Positions 2,951 to 63,741 of a stretch of 64,000 nucleotides of DNA are shown piece after piece (positions within the stretch are counted from its first letter, which is position 1; the number at the start of each line of letters is the position of its first letter). Origin of the DNA: Macrostomum hystrix (Eukaryota; Animalia; Platyhelminthes); NCBI GenBank assembly GCA_950097015.1, contig CATNEN010000015.1:1984001-2048000 (forward strand). Direction: 5' to 3'. The translations under genes were made by a program, and so were the position numbers. The notes under the pieces were generated by a model. It did no database searches. It was not told the DNA's origin and was given only the letters and a program-made list of their open reading frames with translations.

Positions 2951-4330
2951 ATTATCCCAGCACAGGTGACAACTAACCGTGTCCCAATACCCACCATCCC
3001 AGCACAGGTGTTAACTAACCGTGTCCCAATACCTGCCATCCCAGCACAGGTGACAACTAACCGTGTCCCAATACCTGCCATCCCAGCACAGGTGACAACT
3101 AACCGTGTCCCAATACCTGCCATCCCAGCACAGGAGACAACTAACCGTGTCCCAATACCTGCCATCCCAGCACAGGTGACAACTAACCGTGTCCCAATAC
3201 CTGCCATCCCAGCACAGGTGACAACTAGCCGTGTCCCAATACCCACCATCCCAGCACAGGTGACAACTAACCGTGTCCCAATACCTGCCATCCCAGCACA
3301 GGAGACAACTAACCGTGTCCCAATACCTGCCATCCCAGCACAGGTGATAACTAACCGTGTCCCAGTACCTGCCATCCCAGCACAGGTTATAACTAACCGT
3401 GTCCCAATACCTGCCATCCCAGCACAGGTGATAACTAACCGTGTCCCAGTACCTGCCATCCCAGCACAGGTTATAACTAACCGTGTCCCAATACCTGCCA
3501 TCCCAGCACAGGTTATAACTAACCGTGTCCCAATACCTGCCATCCCAGCACAGGTGATAACTAACCGTGTCCCAATACCTGCCATCCCAGCACAGGTGAT
3601 AACTAACCGTGTCCCAGTACCTGCCATCCCAGCACAGGTTATAACTAACCGTGTCCCAATACCTGCCATCCCAGCACAGGTTATAACTAACCGTGTCACA
3701 ATACCCACCATCCCAGCACAGGTGATAACTAACCGTGTCCCAATACCTGCCATCCCAGCACAGGTGATAACTAACCGTGTCCCAATACCTGCCATCCCAG
3801 CACAGGAGACAACTAACCGTGTCCCAATACCTGCCATCCCAGCACAGGAGACAACTAACCGTGTCCCAATACCTGCCATCCCAGCACAGGTGATAACTAA
3901 CTGTGTCCCAATACCTGCCATCCCAGCACAGGAGACAACTAACCGTGTCCCAATACCTGCCATCCCAGCACAGGTGATAACTAACCGTGTCCCAGTACCT
4001 GCCATCCCAGCACAGGTTATAACTAACCGTGTCCCAATACCTGCCATCCCAGCACAGGTGATAACTAACCGTGTCCCAGTACCTGCCATCCCAGCACAGG
4101 TTATAACTAACCGTGTCCCAATACCTGCCATCCCAGCACAGGTTATAACTAACCGTGTCCCAATACCTGCCATCCCAGCACAGGTGATAACTAACCGTGT
4201 CCCAGTACCTGCCATCCCAGCACAGGTTATAACTAACCGTGTCCCAATACCTGCCATCCCAGCACAGGTGATAACTAACCGTGTCCCAGTACCTGCCATC
4301 CCAGCACAGGTGATAACTGTGTTCCAATAC
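2951..4330. repeat. 39-bp minisatellite, ~35 units (CCCAGCACAGGTGACAACTAACCGTGTCCCAATACCTGCCAT-type)
   Basis: Direct tandem periodicity; explains the 438-507 aa repetitive ORFs on both strands. Confidence 0.97.
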
Positions 4331-7300
4331 CTATCTCACAAGAGAAAGGAAGGCGCGGAACGAAGTCTCCGGCTAGTAGGCAGTTCTGGGTGCCCAGTCC
4401 CATCTTGCTGTTCTATTTCGCCAGAAACAAGTAGTGCATAGTGTTCTGCTGTGCCGGATGGCACGGAAGGCAGTTCAAGCTAAAGTGGGGCCCTGCACCC
4501 ACTCCGCGCTGAAGACGGCGGCAGTATAGTGAGCAGTGCTCAGGGCTATAATTTGATGCCGCTAAATTGCATATGCAAGCGAGACTGGCACGACACAGCG
4601 GGGGGAGGAGGTGAGAATGCGGCCAGGGCCGGGCACAGCTCAGAAAGTATCCTTTAAGGCAGAACTCGAAAAGGCGTCGAGAGTGGGGAGTGGCTCAGTC
4701 AGTGAGCCAGCTCAGTGGAGGCTGAGAGCTCGTGGGGTTCATCTCGCAGGCTGTGGAGCGCAAATTCCATTTGCCTCACTTCTGCTTCAGCGGGGGGGCG
4801 CCCGCCAGCTCGAGGCAGAGAGCGCCCTCTCCCGTGTGGCCGCTTCCACTTTGCTCGATCCCAACATCTTCTTCCTCCTCCCCCGCTCTCTCACTTATGC
4901 CCCCCGCTTTCCTCTTCCCGAATCCCAATCTCATATCCATTTCTTTTTTCTAGTCCAGCTCCTCATCCTGCCGAGTTATAAGTGAGAATTTGGCGAGAAA
5001 ATATTGCAACAGCGGCGCCTCAGTAGCTGGGCGTGAGTAATTGCGGTCCTAATTGGTAATAGCGCTTTCACGTCTGAGCTGGCCTACTCAACAGTAGGCG
5101 AGTTTGGGGGAAATACTCTGGAAATATTTCACAATAATAAAATAAGAGAAAAGGTGTTTAAATCAAACTTGCTAATATGCTCTGAAAAATAAAGCGGAAA
5201 TAGTTAATTAAGTGCACTTTAAGTGCTACAGATTAGAAATGAGGCCTTCTCGAGGCCTTGAGAAGCTCAGAACTGCAGTAGTTGCACTCTCAGAGAACCG
5301 TCTGAGTCAGCCAGTCAGTCCCAGCAATCGGACAATCTGAAATTCAAGATGTCAGTGTCAGGCCCGGCCAGTGTTCACAGTCTCAGATTCTGTGCTGCAC
5401 GCACTGATTTAAACACAGACGGCTCGCAGCTGCGAAGGCCTGAACGAGCTGGGTAGGGTCTCCTCACCGCCCGCTCTCTCCTCTCACCGTGATTTATCTC
5501 CCCCTTATACCCTTTCCCAGCTCCCCCACCCCACCCACATATAGACATGAGCTGCCTTCCTCCCGACATCTTGCATTATACTCTCCCGGTCCTGCCTTAT
5601 CCTGGCGACTCGCCTGGAGCGCACGCGCTGGCAGGCCGGCTTGACTTCCCTGTACCCGCGACGCAATCGCAGTATTATGGCCCCCACTGCCGCTCCCACC
5701 TCAGTATTTAGCTAGCCTAGGAGAGGACGATCATAAAAGAGGGAGCAGGCCAACAGCTCAAAGTCTTTGCTCGGCAGCTCAAACGAATTGAGTCTTGAGA
5801 GAATTGGTCTGTGCGTCAGATATGTACGCGTGAGTACCGTGCGCGTGTTGAGAAACTGATGCTCAGCCGACCTGCACCTCAATCCGATCCCGCCGTGCCT
5901 CAATTCAATATCAGAAGCCTCCTGTGCACCGACGGGGGCAGAAACCTGATCTTCTTCTCTCTGAATGCTGACTGCCATTGAATAGACTCGAGAGAAGAGA
6001 CAGGGCAGGGCTAGCTCATGAGAACGTAAAGAGAAAAGTAATAAGATGACAGGAACAGCAGCTGCTCCAAGAGCTACTGGCAAATGAGGCTGCATTTCTG
6101 CAAAAGAAACTATCCCACTCCTTGCCTGGCCTTTCCTTTAGCTACTCTGCCCCCTTGTCAGCTCTCTCAGTCCTCAGTGTGTCTCGGAACCCGTCTCCCA
6201 AGCTGAAGGCTCGAGTGAGACCTGCAGGGACTCAGACATCAAAGGAACTGAGGGGTTTGAGAGCAGAGTAAACACGCAGCTGATGAGCTGGCTATCCCCA
6301 TCATAGAGAATCATTTGTGAGCTGTCCAGTGAGCTAGAATTATCCTGGTTAACTTGCGAATTCAGCAAAAGCCCACTTCAATCCGCTGAGAAGAGGTCGA
6401 ACCCGCGACTCACTGTGGACCGGCTGTGGAATTCTCAGCTCGGGATTATGCATGTGCGGATTCTGGATTCCTGGGGATTTCGCGGTTTGAGAACAGCTGA
6501 GAACAGCGCAGCTCTGAGTCTGTCGGATGAGGCTGGCTTAGGAAAGTGCGAGCTGAGGTGGCAGCGACCTCGGACACGCGGCCTGAAACTGATAACTGAG
6601 AGCCTCGCTGGCGGGAAGGAGAAGCTCGATGTGCGAGGCAAAGGTTGAGCCCCGAGGAAAGAGGGATGGGGATTTTTTGGAAAGAACTGCCCCGCCTTTC
6701 TCCTCACACTAAATCCCGAGAGCATCTCTAAGGAGCGAGGAGGCAGACGAATGCGGGATGCGGGGGGGGAGAGAAGGAGAGCTTTGAGCAGTGCTCAAAC
6801 TCAAACCGCCCTGTCACCCTCGCGCACAAACCAGATCCTGCGGGGGATCTGGGGATGGGGATCCGGCGAGGGAGGGACGGGCGGGAGAGAGCGGCGGAGC
6901 GCTCATTGTGCCTCGGCCCTGCCTCACCCCATACCCAATATAGACACCGCCTTATTCAGTGGGATCTCGGGAAACCAGCTCCCATTGATTCGGGGAGTGG
7001 CCCCTCAGCCACCTCCCTCCTCCACCCCCTCTCCTCTCCGCATCCCTCCTCGCATCCTCACGCAATCCTTCTTCCCCTCGGGTGCTCAAACCGGCCCAAG
7101 CTCCGTCTGGGATATAAAAAAGCGTTCAGTCGCAAGGCCCGCACGACCTGACGGCCTCCCCGCCTTCAAGCCGCTCCCAAACAGCCGCCTCGAGCAAGGG
7201 ACCCGGACAAAGCAGGCCATAATATCACACATTAGCGACTGGACAGGCCTGTAAGCCAGCTGCCCCGCAACACCTCAACCAGGCCCACCGTTGTTTGGCC

Positions 7301-55003: not shown

Positions 55004-56135
55004 TCTATGCACCGCCCGAGACTTCCAAGTATTTCGATGAGGATGTCTGGGAGGATATAAAAGGTCTCATTCAGACGTATTCCACAATAGGAATCGTTCT
55101 CACAATCGGTGATTTTAATGCAAGGACGGGGTCAATGCAAGCAAATTGTGGTCCTCATTTCCGTAGAGTTAATCAGGACACGGGAAAAAGCAAACATGGC
55201 CTCCAACTCTTAGAAGTGTGTTGTGAAACGAAATCAGCAATCCTCAATGGGCTAAGTGGAGTAGCTGAAGGGGATATTTTGGGAAACTACACTTACAGCT
55301 GTACGCTGGGACGCAGCTATTGATTGATTATGCCATTGCGTTCATAGATAGTCTTGACATGGTGGAAGATTTCTTTGTCCACCCTCAAAACTTCCTCTCA
55401 AAGCACTCTCCATTGACAGTCAAAGTGCGCATACAAGACATGAGCCCTCAGGAAGTGGTACGCGGGAACAAGACCATAAACTATCCAAGGCCACCCACCT
55501 GGAATCCCGTTGCACAGCAGCACTTCATCGAAGCCCTAGAAAGTCAACAGAGTCTGGAATACATAAAGCAGATTGTTACACAGGAAGTAAAGGAGACCTC
55601 ATCTATTGCTGATCTCACATCTAAGTTAAACCGTCTGCTGCAGAGGAGTCCGTTCCCAAGAGCGGGGGTAAAAATATTATTCCCAACAAATTCTGGATAA
55701 ACAGAGACGAAAATCTTAGGGATTTGGCTAAATCATTAAAGTACGTAGCAAGGAAAAAAGTCGAAAGCCAGCGGACAGATCACTGGTCACAGAATACGAT
55801 GAGCTTGCAAATAAGTATTGGAACCATCTAAAAAAGCTGAAAAAACTGACATAAATTATTTTATCCAGAAAATTGCATGCTCCAACACATCCAGGGGATT
55901 TTGGTCAGGTTTAAAAAGAGCCGAGGAATTGCTGTTTCCCAACAAGCGAGTTTCCAGGGCACAACCCCCAATAGCAGATATTCAGAAGCACCTAAGCAGC
56001 ATTTTCAACATGCAACCCTCAGTCAGATGCCTCCGAAGTCATCCACCAAACCCAAAAATCTTTACAGACACAACAGTCAGCACCCAGGAAATTGATAAGG
56101 CAGCTAGATAACAAAGCCACTGCCCTGAGGCCCAT
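55004..56135 (+). mobile_element. Non-LTR retrotransposon fragment, AP-endonuclease region, frameshifted and truncated before the RT
   Basis: IYAPP...IGDFNARTG...ILNG...IDYAI...SKHSPL motifs of the APE domain, followed by linker reads broken by frameshifts. Confidence 0.8.
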
Positions 56136-56661
56136 AGTTAGAATGCAAAAACACAATAGCTATTCTTCTTTCGGTCCGTTTTAATTTTCTCTTTAAATTT
56201 CAATATTTCATTTTTGTTTTAATGCCTTTGTTTATTTAAAAAATTTGTTTTCTTTCAAATATTTTATTCACCTAAAATAAAACCTTATGCATGCTACTGT
56301 TCTTCTATCACCTTCTTTTTTAAATCGAATTGTTCAGCCTCAAACATCAAATAAACAAAAAAATCAGCACCCAATCGGCGGGCGCACCTCAATAATAATA
56401 ATGGGTGGGTAAAGCAGCTCGCGGCTTTACCCGTTTTTAATGTCAGAGCGCGCGGCCCTCCTCTCTCTCTGCCCTCTCTCCGCCGCCTACCGCCCACCCC
56501 CTTTTGCGTGTTCATCTGTGCTCGTACATTTCCGAGACTGCACATTTTAAGTCCCGGGGCTGCGCCCCAATATATGTCGCCCCGTGTTGAGAAGCGAGGA
56601 TCGCTGTCGCTGTCTCAAAAATAAAATTTTTAAAATAAAATTTGCTAAATAGATTTTTAGC

Positions 56662-57737
56662 ATGGCAGAGCTGCTCAATCAGCTACTTGGCATGACTTCG
56701 CGCCAATTGTCAGACCATCTGGAGTCACTTGGCTGCAGTACCGAAGACAGCGCCCGTGGCAATAAGAGCGACAAAATCAAACGCATTCTGTCCCTGCAAA
56801 AGGACGAGGGCGCCTCCAGCGACGCATCCAGCCTTCAGGCGCAGATCGACGAACTGCTTCGGACATCCGGCGAGACCAACGGCAACGCGGCCGGGCCCCC
56901 TGCAGCGACTGGACCTGACAATGAGGCCATGGAGGCGGAGATCCGAGCGACGGAGCAGCGCATCCGACTGCTGCAGCTGAAGCGTGAGGAAGCTGCACTG
57001 CGCGCCGAGCTCAGATCCCTCCCGGCCGCCCCGCAGCCCGCTGGAAATAGCTCTGGTGAGTGGCGACATAACCTCCACACTATTCTAACGCATGATGATG
57101 AAGGAGATTATGCGCAGGCGCAGGAGCCCTGCCGAAGACGTCCAAGCCGCTGCTGGTGTCAGATTTCCTCAGCAGAGAAGGATCGTCTGAGAACACCGTT
57201 TTGCACAGTCGCTCAGGTGATTTGGTGTTTAAAGGCAACAAGTCTGTATGCGCTGAAAATATCAATCTGGCTCAGTGGATTATTGGAAATGCGAAGGTGT
57301 TGGACTGCATGCTGAACAAAGGACAGCTTGTTACAGTGGGTGCCGATGGCCGGCCGGACGTGTCAGAACTGAGGCAATACCTGAAGTACAACATCCAGAT
57401 CGGCGAACTGGCGGAGTCTGGCTTCGGAACCGCCAAGATCATGCGCTTTGACGAGAGCTACCGCATCAACCAGCACAGCAGCAGCTTTCCGTGGGCGACC
57501 GAGTCATTCCAGCTGCTGGCCAGGCACCTGCTAGCACCAGACAACACCAACGAATCGCGTTTCCAAAAGGTTAAATCTCATCAGACTCAACCAAGCCGGC
57601 CAGTCTGCAACAATTTCAATGCCAACAAGTGCTTCCGCAAGGCCTGCCATTTCCAGCACATCTGCCGAATCTGCAAGGGCAACCACCCGGCCAGTGCCCA
57701 CGAGTCAGGCACCAGCCAAGATCCTGCAAAAAACTAA
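56662..57737 (+). CDS. Gag-like protein of the Ngaro element, predicted spliced (56662-57055 + 57118-57737, ~337 aa)
   Basis: N-terminal SAP-like motif and coiled coil. C-terminal Cys/His knuckle CNNFNANKCFRKACHFQHICRICKGNH. The two halves are in different frames, joined exactly by a 62-nt GTGAGT..CTAAC..CAG intron. Confidence 0.75.
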
Positions 57738-57826
57738 TTGGGGCGGCCAGCGGGCGGCCCTCGCCATCGGGGACCGCCAACGAGCTGGCCCAGCTCCCTG
57801 TTTTTAGCCTTTTAACTCCTCAAGCA

Positions 57827-59479
57827 ATGTCTGAAGCCGCTCTGCTCTGCTCCGGCCTTCACAACAAGCTGGCTGTTTGGGAAGAAGAGCTGCAATCCGA
57901 TCCCGATGCCGACTTCATTTTGAAGGGTCTCCGTGATGGCTTTGAAATAACTAATCTGACTGGTATTCAAACTGCTAGCGAAGATAATCACAGGTCCGCT
58001 ACCTGTCCTGAAAATCGCGAGCAAGTCGAGAAGCTGATCTTGGATGAGCTGAAAAACAGCAGGTACATGCTAGTCGAAGACAGGCCGCGCATCATCAGCC
58101 CGCTAGGTGCCGTGGCCAAGTCATCTGGCGGTCTTCGCCTGATCCATGACGCCAGCCTGCCCCGCGGCCGGAGCATCAACGAGTACTTCAAGCAGGATAA
58201 GAAGCTTCGCTTTTCAACCGTTAGTTCTTTCACCAAGAAGCTGAAACCAGGCTGGTTTATGGCCAAAGTTGACCTCGCCAAGGCCTACCGCTCCTGTCCA
58301 GTCAGCGCTAACGCCTACCAGATCACGGGGCTACGATGGACTTTCAGCGGTGAGAGCGAGCCCCGGTACCTCGTGGACACCTGTCTTGGCTTCGGGTTCG
58401 CTGCCAGCGTCAATGTGTTTCACCGACTCTCCGAAGCGGTCAAGCGCATGATGATTCGCCGAGGTTATCACGTCATCTGCAACTACCTCGACGACTTCGC
58501 CGTTGCCGCCAGCACCCTCGATGCCTGCCAGGAGGCCTACAATACCCTCCTGAGTCTTCTGCGTCGCCTGGGTTTTTCTATCAACTGGGAGAAAGTGTCT
58601 CCACCCAGTCAGTCTATGGTTTTTCTCGGCATCCACATCGACACGGCTGCCGGCCGACTAACTCTCCCGCAGGAGAAGCTCGAGTCTTTACAGAGCCTGC
58701 TGGATGCCGCAGCTGCCAGCAAGCGACTCAATAAGAAGCAACTGCAGAAGCTTTGTGGCAAAATTGGTTGGTTTTGCGAGGTCGCCCGCGCTGGTAGATC
58801 TTTACTTCGGAGCCTCATTAACTTGACCAACAGCTTGACTTTGCCTCATCACAAAATGCGCGTCGAAGGCCCACTGGAGGAGCAGTTGCGTTTCTGGAGA
58901 TCAGCGACCAATTGGATGCACGGAATCGAGCTGTGGCCGCAGTTCGCCAAGCGGTTGGTCGTCGAGACAGACGCCTGCCTGACAGGTGGCGCTGCAGTGA
59001 TCTCGGATGGAGCAGAGAGTGACTGGATGTTCGTTGACTGGGCTGCTGATTTTTCTGGCGCGTTGCAAGGCCTGCATATCAACTATTTGGAGTGCGCGAT
59101 GCCTTTGGTTTTTATCATCCTGTTCAACGAGCGTTTGGCCAACTGTCACGTTGTTTTCTATACCGACAATTCGTCTGTTGCAGGGATGCTGCGCAAGGGC
59201 TCTGCCAAGCCCCCAATCATTCAGGCGCTGACGCGTACAGCTATTCTAATTGCTCTTAAGTATCGCATTCATTTTGAAGTTTTTCACGTTCCTGGGAGAT
59301 ACCAGATCTTTAGCGACCCTGCCTCCCGTCTGACTAATAAGCACGGTCTCATAAACTTTTTGCTTCGTTACTATGGCTCTATTTACGTCAACGCAGCTGC
59401 TGTTGCTACGCACGCGCTGTCTGCCGCTTCCTGCCAATCTCTCTTTTTGCAGGTCCAGAAGCTGCAGCGGGGCCCCTGA
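57827..59479 (+). CDS. Pol: reverse transcriptase + RNase H of the Ngaro element
   Basis: RLIHD, KVDLAKAYRS, GFGFAAS, NYLDDF (RT). VETDAC, HINYLE, FYTDNSSV, HVPG...DPASR (RNase H). Frame is open from 57629; first plausible ATG 57827. No methyltransferase domain follows. Confidence 0.93.
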   Translation: MSEAALLCSGLHNKLAVWEEELQSDPDADFILKGLRDGFEITNLTGIQTASEDNHRSATCPENREQVEKLILDELKNSRYMLVEDRPRIISPLGAVAKSSGGLRLIHDASLPRGRSINEYFKQDKKLRFSTVSSFTKKLKPGWFMAKVDLAKAYRSCPVSANAYQITGLRWTFSGESEPRYLVDTCLGFGFAASVNVFHRLSEAVKRMMIRRGYHVICNYLDDFAVAASTLDACQEAYNTLLSLLRRLGFSINWEKVSPPSQSMVFLGIHIDTAAGRLTLPQEKLESLQSLLDAAAASKRLNKKQLQKLCGKIGWFCEVARAGRSLLRSLINLTNSLTLPHHKMRVEGPLEEQLRFWRSATNWMHGIELWPQFAKRLVVETDACLTGGAAVISDGAESDWMFVDWAADFSGALQGLHINYLECAMPLVFIILFNERLANCHVVFYTDNSSVAGMLRKGSAKPPIIQALTRTAILIALKYRIHFEVFHVPGRYQIFSDPASRLTNKHGLINFLLRYYGSIYVNAAAVATHALSAASCQSLFLQVQKLQRGP

Positions 59480-60498
59480 GGACGGAGCGAGACCGGCTGT
59501 TCAACCAGGCGCTGGCCCCGAGCACAAGGCGAGCTCTGAAGTCACAGCTCAACCGGTGGCAACAGTTCTGTAGCGAGATCGGCATCCACCCGCTAGAGGC
59601 CGACGGCCCAACGGTGTCGTTGTACGTCTCTCACCTACACCTCAAGCATCTGACAGCTTTTTCCAGCTTTCAAGCGTACCTGCATGCTGTGTCCTGGCTG
59701 TACAAGCTAGCCGGGAGGGCCGATCCGACCGCTCACCCGCTGGTACGACTCGCTCTGCAAGGCGTTAAGCGTCAACGGGGTGCCCAAGCACGACAGAAAG
59801 CGGGTTTGACACCGAGCATGCTGCTCCAGCTTAGATCGCACATCGATACGACCTCCTGCTCCGGTGCGGCTTTCTGGTGCTGCCTCCTGGTGGGTTTCTG
59901 GGGCTTGCTACGAGCAGACAACCTGTGCCTGCCATCGGCGGCAGCCGCCCGAAGCCCTCGGCTGGCAGCCAGAGCGGTGCGATTGAAGGACCTGCAGCTG
60001 AGCAGCAAAGGCATCGAGTTGCGCATCCGCCACAGCAAGACCATCCAGTTCGCCGAGCGACTCCACACCGTCTGGCTGCCGCGTCTGCCGGACGTGAGTG
60101 GCTCCCGGCACCCGCTCTGCCCCTTCAGCGCAGTTCTCCTGCACCTCAACCGCAGCCGCTGCGCTGTGGATGGACCCGAATCGCTGCTGTTCTCTTTTCG
60201 TAGCGGCCAGCGTCTGGTCCCCGTCTGTCGGTCGCAGTTCACAAAGCAGCTCTTCAGATCGGCGGTTGCGGCTGGGCTCGACCCTTCGGCCATTTCGGGG
60301 CACTCTCTGCGCAGAGGTGGAGCGTCTTTCTTTGCTGGTGCTGGTGCGTCGGTGCAAGAGGTGATGGCCTTGGGAGACTGGCGCAGCGACTCTGTCTTTC
60401 GCTACATCAAGCCGAGCTGCGAAGCGCGCCGTCGCGCGGTGGAATCGGCGGCTGCGCACTGCCCTAACAGCCCCCTGCCCGCGTTGGCCTCAACCTGA
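59453..60498 (+). CDS. Tyrosine recombinase (YR) of the Ngaro element; no own AUG before the catalytic region
   Basis: ALAPSTRR..W..FC N-terminal domain; LLRADNL (R), KT.Q, GHSLRRGGAS (HxxR), LGDWRSDSVFRY (W, Y). Frame is open from 59341; first in-frame ATG is at 59818. Confidence 0.92.
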
Positions 60499-61241
60499 CT
60501 CTTCTGTTCTTTTCTTTTCTTTTGTTTTTTTTTGTTCCTTCCCTGCCTTGGCTTTGGGCTGCTTCTCGCCTGTGGGCGCACTTTCGCCAACTGCCTTCTT
60601 CCTGCGTTCTTCCTGCTTTTGCCGCCGCTTCAGACATTAATGGGTGGGTAAAGCAGCTCGCGGCTTTACCCGTTTTTAATGTCAGAGCGCGCGGCCCTCC
60701 TCTCTCTCTGCCCTCTCTCCGCCGCCTACCGCCCACCCCCTTTTGCGTGTTCATCTGTGCTCGTACATTTCCGAGACTGCACATTTTAAGTCCCGGGGCT
60801 GCGCCCCAATATATGTCGCCCCGTGTTGAGAAGCGAGGATCGCTGTCGCTGTCTCAAAAATAAAATTTTTCTTTCAGTTTTATCTGCTGCTTTAATTAAA
60901 ATAAACTCGCGCTAACAGCCACATCGCTCATGGGCTGCTTCTCGCCTGTGGGCGCACTTTCGCCAACTGCCTTCTTCCTGCGTTCTTCCTGCTTTTGCCG
61001 CCGCTTCAGACATTAATCTAACTATTCTACCATTATTAACAATTATTTTTGAAATAGTTGATTACTCATCTCAGCCTATGAGTATCTTTCAGCAGCCTAT
61101 TTTACGTGACAGAAACCAATAGCTACTTATTTTTTATTGGACCAGGCAGATAATACAATAACCGATGGGATGACTTGCTCTCGCTTATTAGCGATGAAAC
61201 CATTGTAAAATCGTTCTGGCTCTTCGTTATTAGCGACTGTG

Positions 61242-62045
61242 ATGGCAGTTCTGGTTGCAGTCATCTGTTGCGCTGTCCTAGCCGTCGCGGCGGCTAGGGT
61301 GGCTCGGTTCTCATACATCGGCTGCTTCAAGGACAACTACCGAATCGTCAGAGATTTGAACGGACTTCACGGAGTGAGTAGACTTGGCGAATTAGTTTAC
61401 AGCGACTTGGTTGGATTGCCAGACAACCGGATGACCCACGAATTCTGCAGCAAGGCCTGTTCACTGGGCGGGTTCCCGTACTTCAGCCTGCAGTACAATT
61501 ATGAATGCTTTTGCGGCAAGTCCTATGGTCTCTACGGAGCGGCCAGTGAGTCAGACTGTACGGCGGCCTGCAAGGGAAACGCGACGCAGATGTGCGGTGG
61601 AATAGATCGGAATTCCGTGTTCGCGCAGTTTTACCAAAGTGAGCTGATTGTTTTGATTCTGGAATTTGCTTCATCAGAAAGAGCTGAAAACGTTTGATAG
61701 TGCTCTGGATTTTCCTGGCTATTGGATGAATATTTTAATGACATGACATAGTTCAACATGAATAAAAAACTATTAAAAGTTATTTTCTGAAACCGTTTCT
61801 TGTTTTCAGACAATGCAATCTTTTTTAAGACTGAATTCCCTCGACTGACTGTGGAAGCCACTTGGAGCACTTTCTCAACAATGACTGTGGCATCCAGAGT
61901 GAAGTGCGTGGCTCTGTGCCAGATCAGCGCTGACTGCCAGGCAGTGATATTCTCCAAGCGGCAGCGGCTGTGCTATCGCCTCAGGTTCGCCTACCCGCCA
62001 GCGAGCTTGAGTGGCGTTACTGGAGACTACTACCTGTGTGGCTGA
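61242..62045 (+). CDS. Secreted WSC + PAN/apple-like protein, copy C, ~210 aa. Exons 61242-61638, 61810-62045
   Basis: Same architecture and phase-1 intron (A|GTGAGC...TTTCAG|); 633 nt total. Confidence 0.88.
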
Positions 62046-62536
62046 GACTACTACCTGTGTGGCTGAGACTACTACCTGCGAGGCTGAGACTACTACCTGT
62101 GTGGCTGAGACTACTACCTGTGTGGCTGAGACTACTACCTGCGTGGCTGAGACTACTACCTGTGTGGCTGAGACTACTACCTGTGTGGCTGAGACTACTA
62201 CCTGCGTGGCTGAGACTACTACCTGTGTGGCTGAGACTACTACCTGCGTGGCTGAGACAACTACCTGTGTGGCTGAGACTACTACCTGTGTGGCTGAGAC
62301 TACTACCTGTGTGGCTGAGACTACTTACCTGTGCGGCTGAGACTACTGTACTACCTGTGTGGCTGAGACTACTGTACTACCTGTGTGGCTGAGACTAATA
62401 CCTGTGTGGCTGAGACTACTTACCTGTGTGGCTGAGACTACTGTACTACCTGTGTGGCTGAGACTACTACCTGTGTGGCTGAGACTACTTATTTGTGTGG
62501 CTGAGACTACTACCTGTGTGGCTGAGACTACTACCT
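62023..62536. repeat. 21-bp GAGACTACTACCTGTGTGGCT array (~24 units) starting in the last codons of WSC copy C
   Basis: The first unit includes the TGA stop at 62043-62045. Confidence 0.96.
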
Positions 62537-63741
62537 CAGAATATTTAACCAGTTAGTAGTTCTTTTTATTCCAATTTTCTAAATTACTTAGGAAATTTAA
62601 AGTTGGCTTCATGTTGATCGAAGAAAAAGATTGTGAAATACTTGAAATACTTGTGAGATCCTGAGTTTTCACTGGTCTGCTTGCTGAGAAAAACATTTGT
62701 CGAGCGGGTAAAGATCTAATACAGAAGTATGAGAAGTTTGAGTTATAACCAACAAGTTCTTAAAAACTGGTCTTAGTGTTTGAGATAAATTTCTGTATTT
62801 GGAAACAGATCGTACTAAGACTGTCTTCACTCCAACCCAATCCGTTTTTCTTCAATTCAAGCTTCCAGCCACTGAGTCTCCCACCTGAATAACTAGAGCC
62901 GTCTAGGTATGAGACAGTGCCAAATGCGTCTCTATGAGGCATATTTGAGACAGGTCACCGCTCAAGTGGCCTGTACGTCAATCAGATTTCAGATTTACGT
63001 ACCGATATCAATGCCAATTGTGCTTTTGTGCTACATTCGCAGTGATTTGAAAGTGTCGGTGACTTTTGGTTACTACGGTTCGTACAGTTTCTGTTTACTT
63101 TTGGAGGGGGTGGGTGTGCTTAGGTGGCCATCTGATTGGCTGGCGAAACCCCCATCTACGAGTACACCTTTACTCCTAGCCTTTTCTACTCCCTCATCCG
63201 TTTTTCTTCAATCCAGGCTTTCCAGCCACTGAGTCTCACATCTGAATCTCACTGCTCCTTGACATCTCATCCATGCGTCTTACCCCACCCGCATGAGTCT
63301 CACCCTGAGTCTACCATTCAGTGCTATAACTCAAAGCGGGTGAACGCCGCTGTAAATTTATATCTTCATGGGCGCTACTGCAAGTAGGATGCTTAGCTTG
63401 TTTCAGTCAAATGGAAAATAGCAAATGGAAATTCGCCAGTTACTCTTATGACCAGTTTCGTCCCTTTCATTTATCCGTTTCCTTGGCGACAGCTCATTGC
63501 GGCTTGAAAATAATTCGTCGAGCCGTTAGGAACAGCCGTTTAGGATGGCGGTTAGAGATTTCCATGTGGCCCGATTTTGTCTTCGATATATTTGCAACAA
63601 GTTGCAGCTCCTGATGCCTTCCGATTGGGTGAGACTGCTCACAGGATCACAAGTTTTACCACCTCTGGCATTTTTTGCAAGTGGTAAAATGCTTACAAGT
63701 TCTAATAGGATCTCACTGTAGGCTGCTAGCTAAATATTGAA

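What the first reader, a model, noticed from the sequence alone, without database searches (positions are those of the whole stretch)
56662..60498. One splice donor, three in-phase acceptors: predicted alternative splicing gives Gag, Pol and tyrosine recombinase a common SAP-like/coiled-coil leader
Seen: after 131 codons there is a phase-1 donor TCTG|GTGAGT (57055/57056). (i) CTAAC...GCGCAG| at 57117 (62-nt intron) joins it in frame to the Gag C-half, whose own frame opens only at 57102. (ii) CCTCAAG| at 57824 joins it in frame to Pol (G+CA then ATG); the stronger TTTTTAG| at 57807 gives leader-stop then ATG 11 nt later. (iii) TCTCTCTTTTTGCAG| at 59452 joins it in frame to YR, which has no AUG until 59818, well past its N-terminal domain. 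Products would be ~337, ~682 and ~479 aa. Established: LTR elements package Pol through Gag-Pol fusion, and retrotransposons rarely retain introns; I know of no described mechanism like this for the overlapping ORFs of DIRS/Ngaro elements. Inference: splicing sets stoichiometry, the shared coiled coil co-assembles all three proteins, and unspliced RNA (encoding only a truncated 217-aa ORF) serves as genome. The Pol acceptor is the weakest link.
Basis: partly seen in the sequence, partly recalled or inferred. Interest (0 to 1): 0.85.

Follow-up and report, generated by a model that had tools for sequence, protein, structure and literature searches.

The report
Ngaro retrotransposon: one splice, not three
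This is a Ngaro-type retrotransposon copy whose "gag intron" is only a one-base frame break and whose Pol is reached by an ordinary -1 ribosomal frameshift. Its recombinase, which has no start codon, is very probably made from a message spliced from early gag, a design kept in many related elements.

Summary

(i) The 62-nt "gag intron" is not real. This copy is one base shorter at 57130-57132 than its 98% sister copy and the 77% sister family. Intact relatives translate straight through the stretch as one Gag of about 355 aa.

(ii) Pol does not need a splice. Gag ends in the canonical -1 slippery heptamer A_AAA_AAC (57728-57734), in frame and directly before the stop, with Pol open in the -1 frame. 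The heptamer is kept in five flatworm families and in a limpet element, and one family has no Pol ATG at all.

(iii) The gag-to-recombinase splice (57055 to 59453) is well supported by comparison. In seven divergent families of this genome a phase-1 donor N|GTRAG sits right after the coiled coil. It is always a GGT or AGT codon, against 24% background GGT use. In nine lineages a pyrimidine-rich CAG acceptor opens the recombinase frame in phase 1. RefSeq models in Patella, Glandiceps and Branchiostoma have the same two-exon design.

No RNA data were available, so the junction itself is unobserved. Earlier follow-ups in this scan reached the same reading on sister copies.

The parts
56399..56631 (+). 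A1 terminal repeat (5' split direct repeat)
   Evidence: 100% identical to 60638-60870
56662..57055 (+). Leader exon: the first 131 codons plus 1 nt of gag (SAP-like helix pair, acidic linker, coiled coil). It is shared by Gag and by the proposed spliced recombinase.
   Evidence: ORF. It aligns collinearly with the L037 leader, which hits Pfam SAP at 1.2e-6. The coiled-coil part matches the M. lignano SAP protein P0015.
57056..57061 (+). Splice donor GTGAGT, phase 1, read as Gly-Glu-Trp in unspliced RNA
   Evidence: It is the only GTRAGT upstream of the acceptor. A homologous phase-1 N|GTRAG is present in seven families, and the codon is always GGT or AGT.
57130..57132 (+). Frame break in gag: this copy is one base shorter than its relatives here
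   Evidence: Alignment A1. L003 gag is continuous at 366 aa.
56662..57737 (+). gag (broken at 57130-57132). The C-terminal part carries a CCCH-type zinc knuckle, and the stop is TAA at 57735-57737.
57728..57734 (+). -1 slippery heptamer A_AAA_AAC in the gag 0-frame, directly before the gag stop
   Evidence: The same site is found in L003, L037, L062 and L063 and in Patella L059.
57745..57790 (+). Conserved stem-loop downstream of the heptamer (7-bp stem GGCCAGC/GCUGGCC plus an inner helix)
   Evidence: The z-score is modest in this copy (-1.8) and strong in L037 (-4.5).
57728..59479 (+). pol frame (-1 relative to gag): linker, then RT and RNase H. There is an internal Met at 57827, and the stop is TGA at 57477-59479 region end (59477-59479).
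   Evidence: Pfam RVT_1 at 5e-13 and RT_RNaseH. The frame is open from 57575. The -1 reading is collinear with L003.
59435..59452 (+). Pyrimidine tract and CAG acceptor, phase 1 into the recombinase frame. It lies inside the last codons of pol.
   Evidence: 12 of 14 pyrimidines. Kept in nine lineages.
59453..60498 (+). Tyrosine recombinase exon (347 codons plus stop). There is no ATG before 59818.
   Evidence: Pfam Phage_integrase and the SAM-like N domain, both weak. HMMER gives 62 relatives at 1e-30.
60555..60641 (+). B1 repeat
   Evidence: 100% identical to 60931-61017
60638..60870 (+). A2 repeat
60931..61017 (+). B2 repeat (3' end of the element)

Best explanation
Window 56399-61017 is a young Ngaro-type tyrosine-recombinase retrotransposon with the layout A1, gag, pol, YR, B1-A2, spacer, B2.

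In intact relatives the unspliced RNA encodes a continuous Gag. A -1 ribosomal frameshift at A_AAA_AAC, just before the gag stop, gives Gag-Pol (RT/RNase H).

The recombinase frame has no start codon. It is expressed from a subgenomic message in which a phase-1 donor in gag (exon end 57055, right after the coiled coil) is joined to a phase-1 acceptor 27 nt before the pol stop (exon start 59453). The product is about 479 aa: a SAP-like, coiled-coil leader fused to the recombinase.

This particular copy has lost one base in gag (57130-57132), so it cannot make full Gag or Gag-Pol by itself. The 62-nt 'intron' and the Pol acceptors are coincidences.

Shown: the anatomy, the frame break, and conservation of the sites. 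Inferred: that splicing and frameshifting actually occur.
For: Gag is continuous in relatives.
- L003 gag is 366 aa and reads through the supposed intron.
- Alignment A1 shows the window one base short against L002 and L003/L005.
- L037, L062, L063, L067 and L061 gag frames are also continuous across the site.

Frameshift for Pol.
- A strict X_XXY_YYZ heptamer, A_AAA_AAC, sits in frame at the gag end in the window, L003 and L037, in L062 and L063 and in Patella.
- Pol is the -1 frame.
- L037 has no Pol ATG.
- A stem lies downstream of the heptamer.
- A_AAA_AAC is among the shiftiest sites in eukaryotes (PMC5009743).

Splice for the recombinase.
- Phase-1 donors sit directly after the coiled coil in seven families. 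The downstream amino acids differ, but GTRAG is kept.
- The donor Gly codon is always GGT, against a background of 0.235, giving P about 2e-4 for six.
- A phase-1 Yn-CAG acceptor is found in nine lineages.
- Upstream of the acceptor only the pol frame shows codon-position constraint: substitutions 9/2/14 in the pol frame against 14/9/2 in the recombinase frame. Directly after the pol stop the recombinase frame takes over, at 8/5/22.
- No conserved slippery heptamer lies in the pol/YR overlap.
- RefSeq models XP_050388701.2 (Patella), XP_077986280.1 (Glandiceps) and XP_019639177.1 (Branchiostoma) are two-exon leader+YR genes. Their phase-1 introns contain gag-C and pol.
Against: - No RNA evidence. 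The only run holding any of the stretch covers 60550-60752 as contigs and shows no joints.
- No transcript-derived fused protein was found in the protein collections.
- No intron-less (processed) copy was found among 16 leader copies of the abundant L037 family.
- The families share ancestry, so the codon statistics overstate independence.
- RefSeq models may be partly ab initio, and I could not see their evidence.
- Two degraded copies (L062, L063) carry pol and YR in one frame, so a Pol-YR fusion is not obviously lethal.
- The stem after the heptamer has only a modest z-score here, and the linker shows no third-position bias.
- The one-base loss could be an assembly error. No reads cover it.
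Confidence: 0.62

Rival explanations
1. One donor feeds three in-phase acceptors, so Gag, Pol and the recombinase are all made from spliced messages that share the leader. Unspliced RNA is only the genome.
For: All three joins are in frame in this copy. TTTTTAG and CTCAAG before the Pol ATG are also present in L003.
Against: Gag is continuous in relatives, and removing 62 nt there would break their frame. The L003 sequence has no matching gag acceptor. The sequence before the Pol ATG is open in the -1 frame and is preceded by A_AAA_AAC in six lineages. L037 has no Pol ATG.
Confidence: 0.04
2. The recombinase is made by recoding, not splicing. A second -1 shift, or another slip, in the pol/YR overlap (59341-59476) gives a Gag-Pol-YR polyprotein, as in retroviruses with two frameshifts. 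Candidate sites are the T-run C_TTT_TTG at 59356, G_GGC_CCC at 59470, and C_CCC_TGA at the pol stop.
For: YR is the -1 frame of pol in the window, L003, L037 and Patella. The T-run is kept in the window, L003 and L011, and the -1 frame opens just there. L063 encodes such a fusion outright.
Against: No strict heptamer is conserved, and L037 has none at all. The recombinase frame upstream of the acceptor shows no coding constraint. L037 pol does not stop near the junction. In Glandiceps and Branchiostoma YR is +1 of pol and barely overlaps it. L063 is otherwise degraded, with a stop in gag and gag/pol frames that are inconsistent.
Confidence: 0.14
3. The recombinase is translated from its own transcript, or by other means: an internal promoter, non-AUG initiation, or spliced-leader trans-splicing onto the 59452 acceptor.
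For: The acceptor is strong and conserved, and would serve trans-splicing equally well. Some relatives (TARA contig L030, Glandiceps) have a YR ORF with its own ATG.
Against: An exon that ends in a complete codon (phase 0), such as a flatworm spliced leader ending in AUG (my recollection of the literature, not checked here), joined at 59453 would read the pol tail and stop after 8 codons, not the YR frame (frames). This model does not explain why a phase-1 GT donor is kept at synonymous sites in gag. There is no ATG before codon 122 of the exon.
Confidence: 0.1

Closest known systems
Ngaro / DIRS-order tyrosine-recombinase retrotransposons (Goodwin and Poulter; general features as summarised in PMC6681497)
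   Same: Gag-like ORF, RT/RNase H ORF and tyrosine recombinase ORF that overlap. Split direct repeats A1...B1-A2...B2. No DDE integrase.
   Different: The papers I could search say nothing on how the ATG-less, overlapping recombinase ORF is expressed, and none mentions natural splicing or an A_AAA_AAC frameshift in these elements. The original Ngaro paper is not held.
Retroviral subgenomic splicing, for example avian leukosis/Rous sarcoma virus env, whose message keeps the first gag codons, and the spliced pol message of foamy viruses (my own knowledge)
   Same: A donor in or near gag is joined to an acceptor at the end of pol, so that a downstream ORF is translated from a shorter message. Unspliced RNA is kept as genome and as gag-pol message.
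   Different: Here the spliced product is the integration enzyme, not an envelope protein. It would also inherit a 131-residue functional Gag module (SAP-like domain plus coiled coil), not a few codons.
Retroviral -1 gag-pol frameshifting at A_AAA_AAC, of the MMTV gag-pro or HTLV type (PMC5009743)
   Same: Identical heptamer, in the 0-frame, just before the gag stop. Pol is in the -1 frame and a structured region follows after a short spacer.
   Different: The host element is a tyrosine-recombinase retrotransposon. The stimulatory structure is only predicted. One sister family (L067) uses an in-frame stop instead.
RefSeq gene models XP_050388701.2 (Patella vulgata), XP_077986280.1 (Glandiceps talaboti) and XP_019639177.1 (Branchiostoma belcheri)
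   Same: Two exons, a gag leader and the recombinase. A phase-1 intron of 2.2-3.3 kb holds the rest of gag and all of pol.
   Different: They are annotated as uncharacterised host genes or 'xerD homolog', not as transposon products. The leaders are not alignable in sequence to this one. Recombinase identity is 33-36%.

Membership tests
Ngaro-type YR retrotransposon | Encodes a tyrosine recombinase instead of a DDE integrase | tested here: met
   Pfam Phage_integrase and the SAM-like N domain. The HxxR and W...Y motifs are visible in the ORF. No integrase or protease hit.
Ngaro-type YR retrotransposon | RT plus RNase H ORF | tested here: met
   RVT_1 at 5.2e-13 and RT_RNaseH at 0.0046
Ngaro-type YR retrotransposon | Split direct repeats A1 - internal - B1 A2 - B2 | tested here: met
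   A is 233 nt and B is 87 nt, both 100% identical, in that order
Ngaro-type YR retrotransposon | No methyltransferase domain (this separates Ngaro from DIRS1 and PAT-like elements; my own knowledge) | tested here: met
   Pol is 550 aa with only RT and RNase H hits
Ngaro-type YR retrotransposon | RT/YR phylogeny places it with reference Ngaro elements | not tested
   No named reference sequences were to hand. The best word-search hit of the recombinase lies on a TARA contig with gag, RT, YR and a GDSL-lipase ORF, an arrangement known from Ngaro elements.
Programmed -1 ribosomal frameshift site | X_XXY_YYZ heptamer in the 0-frame within the overlap | tested here: met
   A_AAA_AAC at 57728, with the frame check passed
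Programmed -1 ribosomal frameshift site | Downstream ORF open in the -1 frame from the site | tested here: met
   The pol frame is open from 57575 and the -1 reading is collinear with L003
Programmed -1 ribosomal frameshift site | Stimulatory structure 5-9 nt downstream | tested here: inconclusive
   A conserved 7-bp stem starts 10 nt after the heptamer, or 5 nt in the MFE fold. The z-score is -1.8 here and -4.5 in L037.
Programmed -1 ribosomal frameshift site | Frameshift product observed | not testable with these tools
   Needs a reporter assay or proteomics
Spliceosomal intron (57056-59452) | GT...AG with consensus donor and pyrimidine tract | tested here: met
   G|GTGAGT, and 12 of 14 pyrimidines before CAG
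Spliceosomal intron (57056-59452) | Sites conserved beyond what the coding constraint explains | tested here: met
   Seven donors and nine acceptors, with synonymous-codon statistics
Spliceosomal intron (57056-59452) | Junction present in RNA | not testable with these tools
   No RNA run holds the element
Spliceosomal intron (57056-57117, the 'gag intron') | Needed for, and compatible with, the reading frame in related copies | tested here: not met
   Relatives read through it. Its length of 62 nt would break their frame, and there is no acceptor at that place in L003.

The most novel reading that the evidence does not exclude
An ancient phase-1 intron runs from just after the Gag coiled coil to the last codons of pol. 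It is a conserved feature of Ngaro-type retrotransposons in flatworms, molluscs, hemichordates and cephalochordates. It would be the normal way these elements make their recombinase, as a Gag-leader (SAP plus coiled coil) fusion that could travel with Gag into the particle or onto DNA. This would answer the old question of how the ATG-less, overlapping recombinase ORF of these elements is expressed.
Probability: 0.6. Interest if true: 0.7.

Novelty: new variant of a known kind. Interest (0 to 1): 0.55.

Why it matters
How DIRS/Ngaro elements translate their overlapping, often ATG-less recombinase ORF has not been worked out in any paper I could search.

A conserved gag-to-recombinase splice, together with a retrovirus-style A_AAA_AAC gag-pol frameshift, would give this order a complete and testable expression scheme. 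The scheme would resemble that of a simple retrovirus, with the integration enzyme in the place of env.

It also matters for annotation. Leader-recombinase products of these elements are already deposited as host genes in RefSeq, and frame breaks in single copies can be mistaken for introns.

Tried and rejected
- RNA evidence. The look-up of sequencing runs gave one doubtful run with a 0.06 share of words. Read laying (4,619 letters) placed two contig pieces on 60550-60752 only and showed no joints.
- Protein searches with the recombinase exon of the window, with the L037 recombinase exon and with the Patella model found no transcript-derived leader-YR protein and no close relative.
- Search for retroposed, intron-less copies. 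All 14 L037-family leader copies that reach the donor keep GTAAGT and run on into gag. Two others are truncated elsewhere.
- Spliced-leader trans-splicing with a terminal AUG was rejected because it lands in the pol frame.
- A -1 slip at the pol stop (C_CCC_TGA) was rejected as a general mechanism because L037 pol does not stop there.
- L062 and L063 at first looked like natural Pol-YR fusions. L062 has a copy-specific deletion just after the acceptor relative to L064/L065. L063 has a stop in gag and gag/pol frames that are inconsistent.
- Rfam found no match in 56000-61200.
- Complex prediction on two copies of the leader returned no answer (score 0.00, controls not run). This is evidence neither for nor against self-association.
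- Literature searches for splicing or frameshifting in DIRS/Ngaro found nothing relevant. The original Ngaro paper is not held.
- The joined leader+recombinase sequence of this element was never built for, or sent to, any search or fold. Exons were searched apart, by reference. In local scripts I only checked that the exons of three public RefSeq loci translate to their deposited proteins.
Full report
**What is there.** Window 56399-61017 is a complete tyrosine-recombinase retroelement with Ngaro-type split direct repeats.
- A1 (56399-56631) equals A2 (60638-60870), and B1 (60555-60641) equals B2 (60931-61017). Both pairs are 100% identical, so the insertion is young.
- Pfam finds RT and RNase H in the 550-aa pol ORF.
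- Pfam also finds a weak Phage_integrase match and a SAM-like N domain in the last ORF. HMMER finds thousands of recombinase relatives.

**Checking the observation.**
- The donor TCTG|GTGAGT ends the exon at 57055, after 131 codons plus 1 nt.
- The AGs at 57117/57123, 57824 and 59452 are all in frame with the downstream ORFs.
- The recombinase frame opens at 59341 and has no ATG before 59818.

**The 'gag intron' is a frame break.**
- The genome holds a 98% copy on C1 (L002/L004) and a 77% sister family on C11/C37 (L003/L005).
- In L003, gag is one ORF of 366 aa that translates through the supposed intron, reading Gly-Glu-Trp-Arg across the donor.
- In alignment A1 the window is one base shorter than L002, L003 and L005 between 57130 and 57132.
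- The stretch is a weakly constrained linker with one in-frame 3-nt indel between families. L003 has no acceptor at that place.
- More distant families (L037, L062, L063, L067, L061) also read straight through.
- A 62-nt intron would break the frame of every intact relative. In this copy it merely offsets the missing base.
Whether the missing base is a mutation or an assembly error cannot be told, because no reads cover it.

**Pol is reached by a -1 frameshift, not by a splice.**
- Gag ends ...GCA AAA AAC TAA. The heptamer A_AAA_AAC (57728-57734) is in the gag 0-frame, and pol is the -1 frame, open from 57575.
- The same in-frame heptamer directly before the gag stop is present in L003, L037, L062 and L063. 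It is also present in a limpet element (L059:4002).
- The -1 reading of the 90-nt 'spacer' is open and collinear between the window and L003, without indels.
- In L037 the Met that starts the pol ORF in the window is absent, so pol there cannot be translated on its own.
- A conserved stem follows the heptamer. Its z-score is modest here (-1.8) and strong in L037 (-4.5).
- A_AAA_AAC is among the most shift-prone sites for eukaryotic ribosomes (PMC5009743).
- One family (L067) instead has gag and pol in one frame, separated by a single stop.

**The recombinase splice stands up to comparison.** I fetched further families from the genome. Their recombinases are only 33-41% identical to this one.
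- Every family with a readable gag has a phase-1 donor directly after the coiled coil. The donors are window TCTG|GTGAGT, L003 CGGG|GTGAGT, L037 AGTG|GTAAGT, L062 CGCA|GTGAGT, L063 TCAG|GTGAGC, L067 CCCG|GTGAGT and L061 CCAG|GTGAGA.
- The residues after the split codon differ (Glu-Trp, Lys-Ser, Glu-Phe, Glu-Gln, Glu-Leu, Glu-Asn), but GTRAG is kept.
- The split codon is GGT six times and AGT once. GGT makes up only 23.5% of Gly codons in these elements (P about 2e-4 if the cases were independent). The following Glu is always GAG.
- At the other end, a pyrimidine-rich CAG is present in nine lineages: the window, L003/L006, L011, L037, L064/L065, L063, L061, L067 and L068. Its G is the first base of a Gly or Asp codon of the recombinase frame, so the acceptor is phase 1.
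- Between the window and L003, the stretch of the recombinase frame upstream of the acceptor shows only pol-frame constraint: 9/2/14 substitutions by pol codon position, against 14/9/2 in the recombinase frame. Directly after the pol stop the recombinase frame takes over, at 8/5/22. Translation of the recombinase frame therefore seems to begin at or near the acceptor.
- No strict slippery heptamer is conserved in the pol/recombinase overlap, and L037 has none at all.
- In each of three elements scanned, the proposed donor is the only GTRAGT upstream of the acceptor, and the acceptor is among the best-scoring.

**Outside this genome.** An exhaustive HMMER search with the recombinase exon alone found relatives with N-terminal extensions.
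- Three are RefSeq models: Patella vulgata XP_050388701.2, Glandiceps talaboti XP_077986280.1 and Branchiostoma belcheri XP_019639177.1. The Branchiostoma model has a second locus with a protein of the same length in the same 90% cluster.
- Mapped to their loci, each model is two exons, a gag leader and the recombinase. Each has a phase-1 GT donor and a phase-1 AG acceptor, and an intron of 2248, 3291 or 2833 nt that contains the rest of gag and all of pol.
- In Glandiceps and Branchiostoma the recombinase is +1 of pol and barely overlaps it. A pol-to-recombinase frameshift is therefore not a general solution, whereas the splice works in all of them.
- I could not see what evidence NCBI used for these models.

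**What is missing.**
- The junction has not been seen in RNA. The only public run that holds any of the stretch covers 60550-60752.
- No transcript-derived fusion protein was found.
- No retroposed, intron-less copy exists among 16 L037-family leader copies.
- The families are related by descent, so the codon statistics are indicative, not exact.
- Two degraded copies (L062, L063) have pol and the recombinase in one frame. They look like copy-specific indels.
- The idea that the shared leader lets the recombinase co-assemble with Gag is plausible but untested. The leader is SAP-like: L037 hits Pfam SAP, and this copy only aligns to L037. The complex job gave no answer.
- I did not build, search or fold the joined leader-recombinase sequence of this element. 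Exons were handled apart, by reference.

**Comparison with what is known.**
- The layout works like a simple retrovirus. Unspliced RNA serves for Gag and for frameshifted Gag-Pol, and a subgenomic spliced message serves the 3' gene. Here the 3' gene is the integration enzyme, and it would inherit a 131-residue Gag module.
- Splicing and A_AAA_AAC frameshifting are both well known in retroviruses. I found neither described for DIRS/Ngaro elements in the searchable literature, and the founding Ngaro paper is not held.
- Earlier follow-ups of this scan (s1-300422, s1-300423), on what are most likely the C11/C37 sister copies, reached the same reading of the recombinase splice and named molluscs and a hemichordate. 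I re-derived both points independently.
- The first-reader note s1-262324, which calls the 62-nt stretch a probable intron, is contradicted.

**Verdict.** One of the three proposed splices is probably real and interesting. One is a frame break, and one is better explained by a classic frameshift.

Noticed in passing
L007 (G000:C7:13383451-13384579, minus strand): A deletion derivative of this family. A1 plus 10 nt (window 56402-56641) is joined directly to window 60125-61017, so everything from 56642 to 60124 is missing. There is no GT at the left edge, so it is not a splice product.
   Followed up: partly
L008 (G000:C38:729449-729826) and L009 (G000:C1:13047514-13047849): Solo A-spacer-B units (equivalent to window 60638-61017) at 97-100% identity. 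They are probably what is left after recombination between A1 and A2.
   Followed up: partly
L002/L004 (G000:C1:20950786-20983199): The 95-98% sister copy is split at element position about 2923 by some 28 kb of other DNA. It carries stops in the leader and in the linker.
   Followed up: no
L067 (G000:C39:817500-824000), locus 3187-3195: In this sister family gag and pol lie in one frame, separated by a single TGA (readthrough type), instead of the A_AAA_AAC frameshift. The phase-1 donor and acceptor are still kept.
   Followed up: partly
L063 (G000:C41:3648900-3655400, reverse-complemented), locus 3191-5938: A 916-aa open frame runs from pol into the recombinase, because the T-run at the Asn-Phe-Leu site is two bases shorter. 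The copy also has a stop in gag and a pol frame that the gag heptamer does not reach.
   Followed up: partly
window 57783-57797: A perfect palindrome, GAGCTGG-C-CCAGCTC, is conserved base for base in the 77% family. Its first half pairs with GGCCAGC at 57745-57751 in the predicted frameshift stem, so the second half may have another role.
   Followed up: no
P0015 (UniProt A0A1I8G0Z6, Macrostomum lignano): A deposited 758-aa 'SAP domain-containing protein' joins a whole gag, about 90 residues of pol and a recombinase. It looks like an annotation chimera of a related element.
   Followed up: no
L030 (TARA scaffold, 4633 nt): A marine metagenome contig carries a complete Ngaro-like set of separate ORFs: gag, RT, a recombinase with its own ATG, and a GDSL lipase.
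   Followed up: no
window 61239-61697 and 61970-62556: Directly 3' of the element lies an ORF with a WSC-like cysteine pattern. It is followed by a long array of a 7-codon repeat that is open in several frames.
   Followed up: no
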